A stretch of DNA of 63,620 bases, counting the filler, from Octopus bimaculoides (lineage: Eukaryota): NCBI RefSeq assembly GCF_001194135.2. It is 8 parts of 7 records of this genome, joined end to end, with 100 filler letters (N's around TTAATTAATTAA, not from the genome) between each part and the next. Parts side by side here need not be neighbours in the genome. Positions count along the whole stretch, not along the records: positions 29,921 to 33,892 come from NC_068985.1; 7 more parts are not named here. The stretch is one strand, 5' to 3'. Below the pieces are notes generated by a model that saw nothing but the letters and a program-made list of their open reading frames with translations, was not told the origin of the DNA and did not search any database. Of this stretch, positions 3,021 to 33,892 are shown piece after piece (position 1 is the stretch's first letter; every line of letters starts with the position of its first letter). Made by a program: the position numbers and the translations under genes.

Positions 3021-4007
3021 TCGCGCGCGCGCGTGTGTGTGTGTGTGTGTGCTTGTGTCTGTAGGGACGCATTTATAGGTGTGTGCATTTGTTCAAGAGG
3101 TTAAATGGTTTTTTGACTGATTTCTATCAAATATTTGTTAATTTGTTTTCGTTTCATTGCTGTCACACTGTACGTTATATACGAAACTAATATACTGACG
3201 TAGATCTTTTCGATATAACTCACTCGGATCACAGATTTTATCTCTTTTTTGACTTAGTGTCTTGGAAGGAGGAAATCAATTAATGTTCAGCATATTTTGT
3301 AGGGCGAAAATTTATTATGTCATACAAGTTGTCCCGTCTGTCAAATATTTTCTAATGTTTGTATCCGTAACAATATTTGAACAGACCCTGTTACTGACAG
3401 CAGTGCACAAAATATTCTGCAAAATCTTTATAAATAAATATAGTTTTTCTTTTTACATGAGGGAAACAGCAACAGTTTACCTACCGTCGTGAGACATTTT
3501 ATATTAGGAGCAGAGGCTTGAGGAATATTGTGTTTATTTTTAATAATCATTAGCTATGTTCTTAAAAGAAACTATGTAAATTCAAGTCTTTCCAATTATT
3601 GAGCTCCTTCGCTCTTTCATTACATACTGATAATGAAAATGATAATAATGTATTATGTGAGAGTGTGTTATAGATTTCTAAGTTTGCATTACGTAGTTCT
3701 TTGTTATTGCAAATACCTATTTGCAGATATTGTTCAAACGCTAACGAAGAAACAAATGTCACCTAACGGTATACCTTGGAAAGTATTTGCTTTCTAAGAT
3801 AAACTATCATCACACTGAATGCCTATTTCACTATCTTAAATAATACAGGTAATCCTTTATGCCAGAGTATGGGTAATCACATTTACTATGTATCTGAAGT
3901 GGTCATTTATCAATAGAAAACATGGTATACGTGGCCGATTTCATGCATATATGCTCATATCATATATGTGTGTGTTTGTGTTTGTGCGCGCGTGTGTGTG
4001 TTTATAT

Positions 4008-9739: not shown

Positions 9740-11199
9740 TTGTATAAAATTAATTAAAGGACATACTAAATATATCTACATGCTGGAAATAACAGACAAA
9801 ACCNNNNNNNNNNNNNNNNNNNNNNNNNNNNNNNNNNNNNNNNNNNNNNNNNNNNNNNNNNNNNNNNNNNNNNNNNNNNNNNNNNNNNNNNNNNNNNNNN
9901 NNNNNNNNNNNNNNNNNNNNNNNNNNNNNNNNNNNNNNNNNNNNNNNNNNNNNNNNNNNNNNNNNNNNNNNNNNNNNNNNNNNNNNNNNNNNNNNNNNNN
10001 NNNNNNNNNNNNNNNNNNNNNNNNNNNNNNNNNNNNNNNNNNNNNNNNNNNNNNNNNNNNNNNNNNNNNNNNNNNNNNNNNNNNNNNNNNNNNNNNNNNN
10101 NNNNNNNNNNNNNNNNNNNNNNNNNNNNNNNTATATATATATATATATATTAGTCCATGAAATTCCAACTGTGTCTGACTTTCAAGTTTTTTTATTTGCA
10201 ATTTATACAATTCTATAATATTGAAATAAGCTATAACTTTCATTTGTTACGCAAACATCAGGCTTATGTCGTGACAGTCATGTCCCACAATTAACAACTA
10301 CAGTGAGAAAGAGATACATGCATACATGCATACAGGCATACATACATACATACATACATACATACATACATACATACATACATACTCATATGTACATTTG
10401 TATTTCTGTCTGTGTGTTTGTTCCCCAACGCTACAATTTGATAACCAGCATTAGCTAGTTTACGTTTCCCCAAGTTAGCGGTCCTGCAAAATAGTCCGAT
10501 AATATAAGAACCGGAATATATGAACACTACATACTAGGGTCAATTTGTTCGACCAAATCCCTCCTTCAAGGCAGTACATGCCTCAGCATGGCCGCAGTTC
10601 AGGAATTTTCTGTATGTCTTAAGATTGTTACGAAGATAATTGAATCATGGGTCTGAGACTTGGCTCCCTTGTATCTTACCAATTCCACAATAAACATTTC
10701 CAAAACTAAATCAAATATCTAACAATATTTCACATTTATTCATCTCTTATTTGAAGATTAAATTGAACTTGAACTAAGTTTAACTTTTATCATTTCAATG
10801 TCTAATTTATTCTACGAGGTTTGGAGTAGACTTGGATATATCACCTATGTCCGTCACTTACAAAAGTTAACCTCGTGCTTTTCATACAAATCAATACGTA
10901 ACAGAAAAGGTATTCCACTTAACAGAACATAACACTGCTAACTGATTAAATAACTTCCATAATATTATCTGATTGTTTGCTTAAAACAAATAACCAAATT
11001 TTAAATTACATCTTACAACTACTAATTTGTATCGTGACAAGTTTCAAGACAGCATCTGATCTTTCAAAAGCATACAACACTATTATCAGCTTTCTTGTTC
11101 CAGTTAATTGGTCTTGTTCAACCAACATGCAGATTTACAAGTTTGTACAGTTAAATATATGAATCACTCAACGTTTGTATTCGTCTTGCCTTGATGTTT

Positions 11200-29920: not shown

Positions 29921-32900
29921 ATATCTAAAGTTCGTGGCCTGGATGATGACGATGTTCGCCCAATGCTCGAAATGCGACTACGATCAAACGATGTTTCTGG
30001 CTCAAATAAACTGCTGCTATCTAAAGTTCGTGGCCTGGATGATGACGATGTTCTTCGCCCAATGCTCGAAATGCGACCACGATCAAACGATGTTTCTGGA
30101 TCAAATAAACTGCTGCTATCTAAAGTTCGTGGCCTGGATGATGACGATGTTCTTCGCCCGGGGCTCGAAATGCGACTACGATCAAACGATGTTTCTGGCT
30201 CCAATAAACTGCTGCTATCTAAAGTTCGTGACCTGGATGATGACGATGTTCTTCGCCCGGGGCTCGAAATGCGACTATGATCAAACGATGTTTCTGGCTC
30301 AAATAAACTGCTGCTATCTAAAGTTCGTGACCTGGATGATGACGATGTTCTTCGCCCAGGGCTCGAAATGCGACTACGATCAAACGATGTTTCTGGCTCC
30401 ATTAAAGTGCTGCTATCTAAAGTTCGTGACCTGGATGATGACGATGTTCTTCGCCCAGGGCTCGAAATGCGACGTAATATGGATGCTGGTCTCGTATAAG
30501 TGCTGCGTAATGGCCTTGGTAACCGATACTGTGATGCTGTCAATAGGGACGCTGGTTTCGTATAGGTACCACGACGTAATATGGACGTTGGCTCTGTATA
30601 GGTACCACGGCGTGCTCCATCAGTAACTATTGATTCCTCACGTAATATGGACGCAGGCCTTGTATAAGTACCACGATTTATTCCATCGGCACTTTTCAAT
30701 TCCACTGGTAATATGGATGCTGATGCTGTAGAGGTACCACGACCCATAACATTGATACGCCTTTGGTTATCCCATATTTCTGCCAAAGAGTCTTCAAAAT
30801 CACGACTCCATCTCGACGTATCAGGGTCCCATGTTACGAAAGGAGATACTTGTTGTGCAAATTCTTGAGGATCAATTATTATATTTGTTGTTTGAATGTC
30901 ACCTGCCATATAATGCTCGGGTGTGCATGCGTCAGACCACAAAGAGCTGAGTGGCTCTGAACTGCGACGTGGCCTTGATAACCGAAACTGTGATGGTGTC
31001 CTTCGTCCAAAGATCGCACTGTCACGAGGTGTACTTGGTAACTGATATTGTGACAATGTGCTTCGTCTAGGGCTCCAAATGCGACGAAGACGAAATGATG
31101 TTTCTGGTCCCAATGAACTGGAGCTGGAATATTTCACTGATGGGGATTTATGCCTAGAATCTTCTCTGTAAGGATTTGCCCAAAATTCTGCCAAACTATC
31201 ATCAAAATCACGACTCCATCTCGAAGTGTCAGGGTCCCATGTTACAAAAGGATTTACTTGTTGTTGAAATTCTTGAGGATCAATTATTATATTTGTTGTT
31301 TGAAAGTCACGTAACTTTCGTGACTTATATTCCGACGAAGCACTACTGTCATAGCTAGAACTGCTACGGTTTGAATCATCGCTCAATATGGATGCTGGTC
31401 TCGTATAAGTGCTGCGTAATGGCCTTGGTAACCGATACTGTGATGGTGTCCTTCGTCCAGAGATCGAACTGCTGTGACGTGGACTTGGCAATTGATATTG
31501 TGACGGCGTGCTTCGTCTAGAGCTTGAACTACGACGAAGACGAAATGATGTTTCTGGCTCCAAGAAACCGCCTCTATCTAGAGTTCGTGACCTTGATGAT
31601 GACGATGTTCTTCGCCCAGGGATCGAAATATCACTATCATCCAACAGTGTTTCTGGTACAAAGTAACCGATGCTATCTACAGTTCGTGATCTGGATGATG
31701 GCGATGTTATTCGCCCAATGCTCGAAATGCCACTAAGATCAGAGGGTGTTTCTGGCTCCAAGAAACCGCCTCTATCTAAAGTTCGTGACCTTAAGTCTAT
31801 CTCGTCTACTAACATAGAATGTGGTTCAACGATATAATATGAACTGCTGTCACCTATAGAATGTGGTTCAACGATATAACATGAACTGCTGTCACCTATA
31901 GAATCTGGTTCAACAATATAACATGAACTGCCGCCACTACGATCAAACGATGTTTCTGCATCAGAGAAACCGCTGCTTTCTAAAGATATTGTCCTTAAGT
32001 CTATCTCGTTTGGTAACATAGAATCTGGTTCAACGATATAACATGAACTGCCGCCACTACGATCAAACGATGTTTCTGCATCAGAGAAACCGCTGCTTTC
32101 TAAAGATATTGTCCTTAAGTCTATCTCGTCTGCTAACATAGAATGTGGTTCAACGATATAACATGAACTGCTGTCACCTATAGAATCTGGTTCAACGATA
32201 TAACATGAACTGCTGCCATCTAAAGTTCGTGACCTGGATGATGACGATGTTCTTCGCCCAATGCTCGAAATGCCACTAAGATCAGAGGGTGTTTCTGGCT
32301 CCAAGAAACTNNNNNNNNNNNNNNNNNNNNNNNNNNNNNNNNNNNNNNNNNNNNNNNNNNNNNNNNNNNNNNNNNNNNNNNNNNNNNNNNNNNNNNNNNN
32401 NNNNNNNNNNNNNNNNNNNNNNNNNNNNNNNNNNNNNNNNNNNNNNNNNNNNNNNNNNNNNNNNNNNNNNNNNNNNNNNNNNNNNNNNNNNNNNNNNNNN
32501 NNNNNNNNNNNNNNNNNNNNNNNNNNNNNNNNNNNNNNNNNNNNNNNNNNNNNNNNNNNNNNNNNNNNNNNNNNNNNNNNNNNNNNNNNNNNNNNNNNNN
32601 NNNNNNNNNNNNNNNNNNNNNNNNNNNNNNNNNNNNNNNNNNNNNNNNNNNNNNNNNNNNNNNNNNNNNNNNNNNNNNNNNNNNNNNNNNNNNNNNNNNN
32701 NNNNNNNNNNNNNNNNNNNNNNNNNNNNNNNNNNNNNNNNNNNNNNNNNNNNNNNNNNNNNNNNNNNNNNNNNNNNNNNNNNNNNNNNNNNNNNNNNNNN
32801 NNNNNNNNNNNNNNNNNNNNNNNNNNNNNNNNNNNNNNNNNNNNNNNNNNNNNNNNNNNNNNNNNNNNNNNNNNNNTAGAATCTGGTTCAACAATATAAC

Positions 32901-33892
32901 ATGAACTGTTGCCATCTAAAGTTCGTGACCTGGATGATGACGATGTTCTTCGCCCAATGCTCGAAATGCCACTAAGATCAGAGGGTGTTTCTGGCTCCAA
33001 GAAACTGCCTCTATCTAAAGTTCGTGACCTTAAGTCTATCTCGTCTGCAAACGTAGAATGTGGTTCAACGATATAATATGAACTGCCGTCACCTATAGAA
33101 TCTGGTTCAACGATATAACATGAACTGCTGCCACCTATAGAATGTGGTTCAACGATATAACATGAACTGCTGTCACCTATAGAATCCGGTTCAACGATAT
33201 AACATGAACTGCTGTCGCCTATAGAATCTGGTTCAACAATATAACATGAACTGCTGCCATCTAAAGTTCGTGACCTGGATGATGACGATGTTCTTCGCCC
33301 AATGCTCGAAATGCCACTAAGATCAGAGGGTGTTTCTGGCTCCAAGAAACCGCTGGTATCTAAAGTTATTGTCCTTAAGTCTATCTCGTCTGTTAACATA
33401 GAATCTGGTTCAACGATATAACATGAACTGCTATCACCTATAGAATCTGGTTCAACGATATAACATGAACTGCTGCCACCTATAGAATGTGGTTCAACGA
33501 TATAACATGAACTGCTGTTACCTATAGAATCTGGTTCAACGATATAACATGAACTGCCGTCACCTATAGAATCTGGTTCAACGATATAACATGAACTGCT
33601 GTCACCTATAGAATCTGGTTCAACGATATAACATGAACTGCTGCCATCTACAGTTCGTGCTCTGGATGATGGCGATGATATTCGCCGAATGCTCGAAATG
33701 CCACTAAGATCGGAGGGTGTTTCTGGCTCCAAGAAACCGCCTCTATCTACAGTTCGTGCTCTGGATGATGGCGATGATATTCGCCCAATGCTCGAAATGC
33801 CACTAAGATCGGAGGGTGTTTCTGGCTCCAAGAAACCGCGTCTATCTAAAGTTCGTGATCTGGATGATGGCGATGATATTCGCCCAATGCTC
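29921..33892 (-). CDS. Partial giant exon encoding an unassigned Ser/Arg/Pro-rich multi-repeat, probably disordered protein; both ends missing
   Basis: No stop in one frame over about 3.4 kb of resolved sequence on both sides of the 32311-32875 gap. The frame is also open upstream of the listed start at 33831 (..SIGRISSPSSRSRTLDRRGFLEPETP). Repeat units are 42 nt and 96/99 nt, with a 408-nt duplication offset, all multiples of 3. Confidence 0.8.

What the first reader, a model, noticed from the sequence alone, without database searches (positions are those of the whole stretch)
29921..33892. Unassigned giant-exon protein built from nested phospho-motif-like tandem repeats
Seen: one minus-strand frame is open across the whole 4-kb piece, including non-repetitive spacers. 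It has at least five repeat classes: 14-aa SSSCYIVEPDSIGD, ~30-aa FLEPETPSDLSGISSIGRRTSSSSRSRTLD (6 copies), EIDLR modules, 12-aa RGTYTRPASILR, and 33-aa PETSFDRSRISSPGRRTSSSSRSRTLDSSSLFE. These are arranged into higher-order units, and unit-length differences are multiples of 3. It does not carry the Met/Tyr motif of reflectins or the Gly/Tyr modules of suckerins, and I recognise no family. Inference: a lineage-specific, highly phosphorylatable disordered protein or protein region whose length evolves by repeat amplification. This is the best candidate for an undescribed system here.
Basis: partly seen in the sequence, partly recalled or inferred. Interest (0 to 1): 0.8.

Follow-up and report, generated by a model that had tools for sequence, protein, structure and literature searches.

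The report
Octopus-only repeat-expanding orphan protein exon
This is part of one long coding exon of an Octopus bimaculoides gene from a small, octopus-only family with no known relatives; its serine/arginine-rich segments have multiplied in frame around a conserved 38-residue module, which is a real but fairly ordinary kind of young, fast-evolving gene.

Summary
One minus-strand frame is open for 796 codons (29921-32310) and 338 codons (32877-33891). The other five frames carry 12-81 stops. All repeat periods (36, 42, 66, 99, 120, 345 nt) are multiples of 3.

The gap cannot be read. Its two flanks are the same 130-nt repeat segment (98.5% identical) in the same codon phase, so every plausible fill keeps the frame.

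The piece is the Octopus bimaculoides locus of UniProt A0A0L8H845, an uncharacterized and partly wrong gene model. It has an O. sinensis orthologue (one uninterrupted 1481-codon ORF) and O. vulgaris paralogues. No Pfam, PDB or non-octopus relative was found among 1.84 billion representative proteins.

A 461-aa paralogue holds each segment once, so the window's nested repeats are in-frame amplifications of parts of one ancestral unit.

Spacers evolve almost neutrally (omega about 0.9), yet neutral drift would have introduced many stops (0 of 2000 simulations stayed stop-free). Only the 38-aa core module, present twice here, shows amino-acid constraint (pN/pS about 0.35).

Best reading: a mostly disordered intracellular protein with several conserved binding modules on variable Ser/Arg spacers. 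Function, expression and phosphorylation are untested. Interest is modest.

The parts
33643..33891 (-). 2.5 copies of the 99-nt (33-aa) unit GFLEPETPSDLSGISSIGRISSPSSRARTVDRG. The ORF is cut at the piece edge.
33400..33642 (-). Six 42-nt units encoding SSSCYIVEPDSIGD.
33256..33399 (-). Tail-derived junction MLTDEIDLRTITLDTSGF plus one 99-nt PETPSD unit. Together with a 42-nt array it forms the 345-nt higher-order unit.
33055..33255 (-). Five 42-nt units (SSSCYIVEPDSIGD).
32911..33054 (-). Junction TFADEIDLRSRTLDRGSF plus one 99-nt PETPSD unit.
32878..32910 (-). A 42-nt unit cut by the assembly gap.
32311..32876 (.). Assembly gap of 566 N. The flanks 32181-32310 and 32877-33006 are the same repeat segment (98.5% identical) in the same codon phase. 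Its content is unknown.
32215..32310 (-). One 99-nt PETPSD unit, cut by the gap.
31816..32214 (-). 42-nt units mixed with a 120-nt higher-order unit (GSSCYIVEPDS-MLxxEIDLRTISLESSGFSDAETSFDRSG).
31558..31815 (-). EIDLR junction plus about 2.5 degenerate 99-nt units.
31384..31557 (-). Ser/Arg linker PETSFRLRRSSSS..SQYQLP..SQYRLP..RSTYTRPASIL. It is homologous to the single-copy ETSFRLHSPSNSGRNTTSRYRFPSP of paralogue P0004.
31294..31383 (-). Non-repeated Ser-rich segment SDDSNRSSSSYDSSASSEYKSRKLRDFQTT, also present in O. sinensis.
31180..31293 (-). Core module 1: NIIIDPQEFQQQVNPFVTWDPDTSRWSRDFDDSLAEFW.
30886..31179 (-). Linker between the two core modules (ANPYREDSRHKSP..PETSFRLRR..SQYQLP..SQFRLS..LWSDACTPEHY). 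It is colinear with O. sinensis, with omega about 0.9.
30772..30885 (-). Core module 2: NIIIDPQEFAQQVSPFVTWDPDTSRWSRDFEDSLAEIW.
30475..30771 (-). RINVMGRGTST segment and R(G/S)TYTxPASIL repeats (36- and 66-nt periods), colinear with O. sinensis.
29923..30474 (-). 5.6 copies of the 99-nt unit PETSFDRSRISSPGRRTSSSSRSRTLDSSSLFE. The ORF is cut at the piece edge.

Best explanation
The piece is the middle and 3' part of one long, uninterrupted coding exon of an Octopus bimaculoides gene. UniProt A0A0L8H845 is a partial model of the same locus.

The gene belongs to a small family seen only in Octopus. Its members sit in local tandem pairs and have a single coding exon. The un-amplified family form (O. 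vulgaris P0004, 461 aa) has one copy each of five parts:
- a polar, acidic N-terminal region;
- an RLRDSLELA segment;
- a Ser/Arg linker (ETSFRL..SRYRFP);
- a 38-aa aromatic/acidic core module (NIxxDPxEFxxQVxPFxxWDPDTSRWSRDFxDSxAExW);
- a tail (PxPTSD..SS[CS][FY]..DS..EI..LNRKW).

In the window's gene, sub-segments of that unit were amplified separately by in-frame tandem duplication, with periods of 42, 99, 36/66, 120, 345 and about 408-450 nt. This gives the nested repeats. One junction shows how it happened: the pre-stop part of the tail (..SCYIVEPDSMLADEIDLR) is fused back onto the RSRTLD end of the 99-nt unit.

Shown here: the sequence is coding, and the reading frame is kept by selection.

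Inferred: the product is intracellular (no signal peptide or membrane segment in complete relatives) and mostly disordered. The core modules are the functional units, probably short helix-hairpin-helix binding sites for a conserved partner. The Ser/Arg-rich repeats are flexible spacers, possibly regulated by phosphorylation. Their number and sequence drift almost freely. The protein would therefore act as a scaffold carrying several binding sites.
For: Identity of the locus:
- P0001 (A0A0L8H845) residues 119-727 match side A residues 169-777 exactly.

Orthologue and paralogues:
- The O. sinensis locus L001 has one open frame of 1513 codons, 1481 from the first Met.
- O. vulgaris P0003 and P0004 are single-exon neighbours.
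- A second family ORF lies 6 kb downstream in L001.

Frame kept by selection:
- The colinear block is about 15-17% diverged at the DNA level (118 differences in 267 codons; 149 of 879 aligned bases).
- Simulated neutral change of 8% per site left 0 of 2000 copies stop-free, for both side A and the O. sinensis ORF.
- The 301-codon colinear block stayed stop-free in only 0.3% of simulations at the observed 17% divergence.
- Indels in the confidently aligned part are 99, 3 and 3 nt.
- All repeat periods are multiples of 3.

Constraint on the core module:
- pN/pS is 0.33-0.42 across 10 module copies from three species. The exception is comparisons between the orthologue-group copies and P0004, at 0.74.
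- Variable columns by codon position are 7/6/12, and 8 codon columns vary only synonymously.

Spacers nearly neutral:
- Omega is 0.87 overall and 0.91 in the linkers. Differences by codon position are 42/41/35.
- Within arrays the ratio is 0.8-1.15.

Origin of the repeats:
- P0004 aligns to the window's linker plus core at E = 5e-18, and to the PETSFD units at E about 4e-5.
- The DNA alignment shows the tail homology and the junction.

Restricted distribution:
- A profile of the module against 1.84e9 representatives found only P0001-P0004 as true hits.
- Pfam and PDB gave nothing.

Disorder and module structure:
- AlphaFold2 gave a mean pLDDT of 38. Secondary structure appeared only at the two modules, as helix, hairpin, helix (one search shows two helices).

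No export or membrane signal:
- There is no hydrophobic N-terminus or membrane-like stretch.

Likely promoter in relatives:
- All four complete family loci share a conserved upstream block with a perfect CRE.
Against: - No transcript, protein or phosphorylation evidence could be obtained. No RNA-seq-derived fragments appeared in the protein library, and no paper cites the accessions.
- Between orthologues, even the core has omega 0.75, though on only 17 changes. Amino-acid constraint therefore rests on paralogue comparisons that are not independent of one another.
- The structure models are low confidence and rest on very shallow alignments.
- The binding-module and scaffold mechanism is inference only. 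No partner is known.
- Absence outside Octopus depends on which cephalopod proteomes the libraries hold.
- The gene's 5' and 3' ends and the gap content are not in the piece.
Confidence: 0.6

Rival explanations
1. The ORF is not functional as a protein. It would be a young or decaying coding-like minisatellite, pseudogene or non-coding transcript, open only because it was amplified recently from an open unit.
For: - Omega is 0.87 between orthologues, with differences spread evenly over codon positions (42/41/35).
- Repeat variants show no amino-acid constraint.
- The repeat arrays are 95-97% identical, so they are young.
- No expression evidence was found.
Against: - The non-repeated 300-codon block is 17% diverged yet open in both species (P about 0.003 under neutrality).
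- The whole 1481-codon O. sinensis ORF and at least four further family ORFs are open.
- Indels are multiples of 3.
- The core shows pN/pS of about 0.35 and an excess of third-position variation.
- A conserved promoter-like block lies upstream of the relatives.
Confidence: 0.1
2. It is a fast-evolving male reproductive protein, made in spermatids or sperm. It would be expressed from a CRE-driven, intronless gene cluster, as many young testis genes are. The Ser/Arg-rich basic repeats would act on chromatin or the cytoskeleton during sperm formation. This concerns where it acts and can coexist with the scaffold reading.
For: - Single coding exon, tandem paralogues and omega near 1.
- A perfect TGACGTCA element about 75 nt upstream of the ATG in all four complete family loci.
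- The O. sinensis product is basic (pI about 10), with 19% Ser and 12% Arg.
- From general knowledge: CREM-dependent post-meiotic genes and young testis genes often look like this.
Against: - No tissue data of any kind.
- CRE sites also drive neuronal and many other genes.
- The O. bimaculoides part seen here is acidic overall (pI 5.3).
- No similarity to known protamines or sperm proteins was found.
Confidence: 0.2
3. It is an SR-related nuclear speckle or splicing protein, as the RefSeq name 'serine/arginine repetitive matrix protein 2-like' implies.
For: - Composition rich in Ser and Arg.
- The automatic RefSeq name.
Against: - No cwf21 domain or any other Pfam domain in the full O. sinensis ORF.
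- SR/RS dipeptides are not enriched over shuffles (60 against 61 +/- 7).
- The longest alternating RS run is 4 residues.
- No homology outside Octopus.
Confidence: 0.05
4. It is a secreted structural or adhesive repeat protein, in the manner of suckerins, reflectins, mucins or phosphoprotein glues.
For: - Nested tandem repeats, one Cys per 14-aa unit, and high Ser content.
- Cephalopod lineage-specific material proteins are known (general knowledge).
Against: - Complete relatives have polar, acidic N-termini with no signal-peptide-like hydrophobic stretch.
- No membrane segment.
- No reflectin MD motifs. Gly is 5.9%, Tyr 3.1% and Met 0.6%.
Confidence: 0.04
5. It is a dispersed satellite or transposon-borne ORF.
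For: - Highly repetitive DNA.
- Reverse-transcriptase-like ORF fragments lie a few kb upstream in the O. sinensis locus (not verified).
Against: - Only four proteins among 1.84e9 representatives carry the module.
- No transposon domains in any family member.
- The copies form local tandem gene pairs with their own conserved upstream block.
- Limit: octopus genomes could not be searched directly at the DNA level.
Confidence: 0.02

Closest known systems
SRRM2 and SR-related proteins (the automatic RefSeq name of the orthologue)
   Same: Long Ser/Arg-rich, low-complexity protein that is probably disordered and phosphorylatable.
   Different: It has no cwf21 domain, no alternating RS runs and no sequence homology. 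It carries an octopus-only 38-aa module instead.
Cephalopod lineage-restricted repeat-protein families (reflectins, suckerins)
   Same: Taxon-restricted, built from repeated modules, with locally clustered paralogues. Reflectin genes being intronless and clustered is from my own knowledge, not tested here.
   Different: There are no Met/Asp reflectin motifs and no Gly/Tyr/His suckerin modules. Relatives have no signal peptide. The distribution appears narrower, Octopus only in the libraries searched.
Genes that evolve by exonic tandem-repeat (VNTR) amplification, such as mucin-type genes (PMC9417175 abstract, listed) and involucrin-type single-exon repeat genes (own knowledge)
   Same: In-frame repeat units are amplified inside one large exon. 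Copy number and unit type differ between close species. Repeat sequence is weakly constrained.
   Different: It is not secreted and not Pro/Thr/Ser mucin-like. Here sub-segments of one ancestral unit were amplified separately, and the conserved non-repeat module is itself multiplied.
Orphan or taxonomically restricted genes in general
   Same: No detectable homologues outside a narrow clade, omega near 1, a simple gene structure and tandem paralogues.
   Different: The ORFs are unusually long (over 1100 codons seen here, 1481 in O. sinensis). They are demonstrably kept open and contain a clearly conserved module.

Membership tests
Octopus 'WDPDTSRW-module' family (defined here from P0001-P0004 and the ORFs in L001 and L002) | The 38-aa core module NIxxDPxEFxxQVxPFxxWDPDTSRWSRDFxDSxAExW. 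| tested here: met
   Two copies, at 31180-31293 and 30772-30885. There are 22 invariant columns across 8 module copies. Profile hits score 285-439 bits to P0001-P0003.
Octopus 'WDPDTSRW-module' family | A Ser/Arg linker of ETSFRL..S(Q/R)YR(L/F)P type upstream of the module. | tested here: met
   blastp of the P0004 C-terminal half against side A gives E = 5e-18 and 4e-15.
Octopus 'WDPDTSRW-module' family | A tail of P(E/K)(T/P)(P/T)SD..SS(C/S)(Y/F)..DS(M)..(D/G)EI type. | tested here: met
   The DNA alignment of the O. sinensis tail with four window units shows clear homology up to EID/EIH. In the window the tail is amplified and lacks the LNRKW end and the stop.
Octopus 'WDPDTSRW-module' family | The conserved N-terminus (..SSYEHL(C/Y)SQ..ADHSQY..) and the upstream CRE block. 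| not testable with these tools
   The piece is cut before the gene's 5' end. The feature is seen only in L001 and L002.
SRRM2 / SR-related matrix proteins | An N-terminal cwf21 domain. | tested here: not met
   No such Pfam hit in the full 1481-aa O. sinensis ORF at E <= 1, nor in the window at E <= 10. The window lacks the N-terminus, so the orthologue carries this test.
SRRM2 / SR-related matrix proteins | RS domains, meaning long runs enriched in alternating Arg-Ser dipeptides. | tested here: not met
   There are 60 SR/RS dipeptides against 61 +/- 7 in shuffles. The longest alternating run is 4 residues.
Reflectins | Repeated Met/Asp-rich reflectin motifs and high Met/Tyr content. | tested here: not met
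   No [MF]D(x5)MD motifs and no MD dipeptides. Met is 0.6% and Tyr 3.1%. No Pfam hit.
Suckerins | Gly/Tyr/His-rich modules alternating with Ala/His-rich modules, plus a signal peptide. | tested here: not met
   Gly 5.9%, Tyr 3.1%, His 0.9%, Ala 2.0%, and no GGY. Complete relatives lack a hydrophobic N-terminus.
WD40 repeat proteins (weak profile hits P0005, P0006, P0010) | Seven or so contiguous blades of about 40 aa forming a propeller. | tested here: not met
   The hits are bacterial WD40 proteins matched only through the short WSPDG(S/T)R motif, summed over up to 12 weak stretches (12, 8 and 4 in the three proteins). The octopus modules are isolated, about 136 aa apart, and give no WD40 Pfam hit.

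The most novel reading that the evidence does not exclude
The 38-aa WDPDTSRW module would be a previously undescribed, octopus-restricted protein-interaction domain. It would sit in a CRE-driven, intronless tandem gene family. Selection would keep very long ORFs translatable while letting the Ser/Arg spacers drift and expand. That would make the family a young set of multi-site scaffold or condensate-forming proteins tied to an octopus-specific process, for example sperm formation or activity-dependent neuronal expression.
Probability: 0.3. Interest if true: 0.5.

Novelty: new member of a known kind. Interest (0 to 1): 0.3.

Why it matters
It adds a clearly delimited, unnamed protein family to the set of cephalopod lineage-restricted genes. 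The family has a conserved 38-aa module, a shared upstream block and single-exon tandem paralogues.

It also gives a clean, datable example of how nested protein repeats arise. Parts of one roughly 160-aa ancestral unit were amplified separately and differently in sister lineages. The reading frame stayed under selection while the spacer sequence drifted.

It shows that the current gene models are wrong. The O. bimaculoides model jumps the gap and ends in a shifted frame. The O. sinensis model splices out open in-frame sequence, and its 'SRRM2-like' name is misleading.

Without expression or functional data this remains a curiosity for cephalopod genomics, not a surprise for the wider field.

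Tried and rejected
- Pfam scans of the window product and of all family members gave only sub-threshold noise.
- A PDB sequence search with the module profile gave nothing below E = 1.
- A Foldseek search of the low-confidence module model against PDB gave one meaningless match at E = 8.
- An Rfam scan of the piece found nothing.
- A word-indexed homologue search with the module alignment returned nothing at all, not even the known relatives, so I treat it as a tool limitation.
- A third homologue search with the non-repeated core found no RNA-seq-derived or other new fragments.
- P0001 could not be located on any contig, so the rest of the O. bimaculoides locus could not be fetched.
- Literature searches by accession, by the RefSeq name and by topic found no paper on this family.
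- WD40 resemblance was rejected as a short-motif artefact.
- SRRM2, reflectin and suckerin membership were rejected on their defining features.
- Plus-strand ORFs were rejected. The longest (234 aa, 29922-30623) lies almost wholly (552 of its 702 nt) in the 99-nt array, where the unit also happens to lack stops in that frame.
- Octopus genomes could not be searched at the DNA level. The DNA collections on offer hold bacteria, archaea, viruses, plasmids and metagenomes.
Full report
**1. What is in the sequence.**
The piece 29921-33892 holds a 566-N gap at 32311-32876. On the minus strand, side A (29921-32310) is open for 796 codons and side B (32877-33891) for 338 codons, with no stop. The other five frames carry 17-81 stops on A and 12-34 on B. 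From base composition alone, such open frames have probabilities of about 8e-21 and 1e-9.

Tandem Repeats Finder reports periods of 99, 36, 66, 42, 120 and 345 nt, all multiples of 3.

| Repeat class | Copies seen |
|---|---|
| SSSCYIVEPDS(IGD) | 18 |
| PETPSD-type 33-aa unit | 6 |
| EIDLR junction | 5 |
| R(G/S)TYTxPASIL | 5 |
| PETSFD-type 33-aa unit | 5 (5.6 by TRF) |

One search gives the coordinates of each block.

**2. The gap.**
It cannot be read, but continuity of the frame can be argued in two ways.
- The last 130 nt before the gap (32181-32310) and the first 130 nt after it (32877-33006) are the same repeat segment. They are 98.5% identical, without indels, and in the same codon phase.
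- In four intact copies elsewhere in the piece, the stretch equivalent to the gap is 215, 257, 413 or 611 nt. Each is 2 mod 3, like 566.

So the frame is preserved whether the two contig ends really overlap or whole repeat units are missing. This is inference. The near-identity of the flanks also explains why the assembler broke there.

**3. Whose gene it is.**
The product matches UniProt A0A0L8H845 of Octopus bimaculoides (P0001, 'uncharacterized protein'). Residues 119-727 of P0001 are identical to side A residues 169-777. That model looks defective in three ways:
- it starts at an internal Met in side B;
- it jumps the gap as if the gap were an intron;
- it ends in 18 residues that are the same repeat read in a shifted frame.

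The O. sinensis relative P0002 (XP_036359032.1, automatically named 'SRRM2-like') is 61% identical. Its locus L001 holds a single uninterrupted frame of 1513 codons, 1481 from the first Met. The gene model splices pieces out of this frame even though they are open and in frame.

O. vulgaris has two adjacent single-exon paralogues, P0003 (927 aa) and P0004 (461 aa). A further unannotated family ORF lies 6 kb downstream in L001.

**4. No known family.**
- Pfam gives nothing for the window or for any relative.
- The PDB sequence search gives nothing.
- A profile of the conserved module, run exhaustively against 1.84 billion representative proteins, finds only P0001-P0004.
- The next hits are bacterial WD40 proteins, matched through the short WSPDG(S/T)R motif summed over up to 12 blades. 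I regard these as spurious.
- Rfam finds nothing.
- No paper cites the accessions or the RefSeq name in an octopus context.

**5. Anatomy and origin of the repeats.**
The module has 22 invariant columns across eight copies from three species.

P0004 is the un-amplified form of the family. It has, once each:
- an N-terminal region;
- an RLRDSLELA segment;
- the linker ETSFRLHSPSNSGRNTTSRYRFPSP;
- one module;
- the tail PKPTSDSSGSSFSDFVAGRDSMSTGEINSHLLNRKW, followed by a short end.

Its C-terminal half aligns to the window's linker plus module at E = 5e-18 and 4e-15, and to the PETSFD units at about 4e-5.

The O. sinensis ORF ends ..SSCYTDEPDSMLADEIHFQSLNRAWHRPNLRRFLN*. At the DNA level this matches the window's SSSCYIVEPDSMLADEIDLR. 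After that point the window sequence rejoins the RSRTLD end of the 99-nt unit.

So the 345-nt higher-order unit is a tandem duplication. It runs from the last 99-nt unit through the pre-stop part of the tail, with the 42-nt piece amplified again inside it.

Different sub-units expanded in the two lineages:

| Species | Sub-unit | Copies |
|---|---|---|
| O. sinensis | RLRDSLELA | 8 |
| O. sinensis | PRTSFRLRRSSSP | 5 |
| O. sinensis | tail-type SSCY unit | 1 |
| O. bimaculoides | SSCY unit | at least 18 |
| O. bimaculoides | PET(P/S) unit | at least 13 |

In O. bimaculoides the tail arrays lie upstream of the modules. This suggests that a larger 3' segment was also duplicated, but the piece is cut at both ends and cannot show it.

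**6. Is the frame kept by selection?**
A 267-codon colinear block (module, linker, module, RGTYT repeats) is 76% identical in protein between the two species. It has dS 0.18, dN 0.16 and omega 0.87. Differences by codon position are 42/41/35, so the amino-acid sequence is close to neutral. Variants among repeat copies are likewise unconstrained, with ratios of 0.8-1.15.

Yet the frame has not decayed:
- Random substitution at 8% per site puts on average 8 stops into side A and 16 into the O. sinensis ORF. None of 2000 simulated copies stayed stop-free.
- The 301-codon block at the observed 17% DNA divergence stays stop-free in 0.3% of simulations.
- A frame-blind DNA alignment has indels of 99, 3 and 3 nt in the reliably aligned part.

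The module itself shows moderate protein-level constraint:
- pN/pS is 0.33-0.42 over comparisons among 10 copies, apart from 0.74 between the orthologue-group copies and P0004.
- Variable columns by codon position are 7/6/12.
- Eight codon columns vary only synonymously.

Two caveats apply. These pairs are not independent. The orthologue-only estimate for the module is 0.75, based on 17 changes.

**7. Properties of the product.**
- The 1134 residues visible are 24% Ser, 11% Arg and 8% Asp.
- There is no membrane-like stretch, and complete relatives have polar N-termini without a signal-peptide-like segment.
- RRxS/T is over-represented (17 against 4 +/- 2), but only because one unit, GRRTSSSS, was amplified.
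- SR/RS, S/T-P and CK2-type motifs are at or below shuffled expectation.
- AlphaFold2 on 362 residues spanning both modules gives a mean pLDDT of 38. Secondary structure appears only at the modules, as helix, small hairpin, helix.
- The module alone reaches pLDDT 60 with two helices. Both alignments are very shallow.
- Foldseek on that model is uninformative.
- The SSSCYIVEPDSIGD region falls slightly on the ordered side of a charge-hydropathy plot.

**8. Interpretation.**
Shown:
- This is a real coding exon.
- It belongs to an Octopus-restricted family of single-exon genes in local tandem pairs.
- Its reading frame is under selection.
- Its nested repeats come from separate in-frame amplification of parts of one ancestral unit.

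Inferred, with low to moderate confidence: the protein is intracellular and largely disordered. The conserved modules are its functional binding sites, and the Ser/Arg repeats are variable, possibly phosphorylated spacers. It would then be a scaffold with several binding sites.

The tissue is unknown. All four complete family loci share about 110 nt upstream of the ATG, including a perfect TGACGTCA element. Together with intronless structure, tandem paralogues and omega near 1, this is compatible with a testis-type young gene. It is equally compatible with neuronal CREB-driven expression.

**9. Verdict.**
- It is untested on phosphorylation.
- It is wrong on the 'unique core'.
- The family is undescribed and has no functional name, but the locus is already in the databases as an uncharacterized protein.
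- The phenomenon, a taxon-restricted gene that expands by repeats, is a known kind. Interest is modest.

Noticed in passing
L001 about 9890-10000 and 20420-20527; L002 about 9900-10000 and 3150-3260: All four complete family loci share about 110 conserved nt upstream of the ATG. The block includes a perfect palindromic CRE, TGACGTCA, about 75 nt upstream. It looks like a shared proximal promoter and 5'UTR. The window's piece lacks this end of the gene.
   Followed up: partly
window 32181-32310 and 32877-33006: The two flanks of the assembly gap are the same 130-nt segment, with 2 mismatches. The 566-N gap may be a misjoined overlap of contig ends and not missing sequence.
   Followed up: partly
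L001:10001-14446: The O. sinensis RefSeq model XP_036359032.1 (1134 aa) removes in-frame, stop-free sequence as introns and uses a different 3' end. The locus reads as one continuous 1481-codon ORF with a family-type tail. Both the model and its 'SRRM2-like' name look wrong.
   Followed up: partly
L001:20492-21691 (+): An unannotated 400-codon ORF has the family N-terminus (..NDSFSSYQHLCSQ..ADHNQY..) but no core module. It lies 6 kb downstream of the main O. sinensis gene.
   Followed up: no
L002:12784-12815: Just after the stop of O. vulgaris P0003, the family C-terminal motif LNRKW continues in another frame. This is either a frameshift, real or an assembly error, or a truncated last unit.
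   Followed up: no
window 29922-30623 (+ strand): A 234-codon stop-free frame runs antisense to the PETSFD array and reads FVAWMMTMF..QCSKCDYDQTMF. The same antisense reading is open over the O. sinensis array (L001:13965-14366). It lies almost wholly within the repeat, so I take it as a by-product of the unit's sequence.
   Followed up: partly
window, P0001 C-terminus (beyond or at 29921-29990): The last 18 residues of the UniProt model (IAFGALGEEHRHHPGLEL) are the 99-nt repeat read in a shifted frame. The HRHHPG reading occurs nine times in minus frame 2. This is either an annotation artefact or a real frameshift just outside the piece.
   Followed up: partly
L001:4145-4961 (-): Two ORF fragments of 130-132 aa look like remnants of a retrotransposon reverse transcriptase, a few kb upstream of the O. 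sinensis gene. I did not verify this with a domain search.
   Followed up: no
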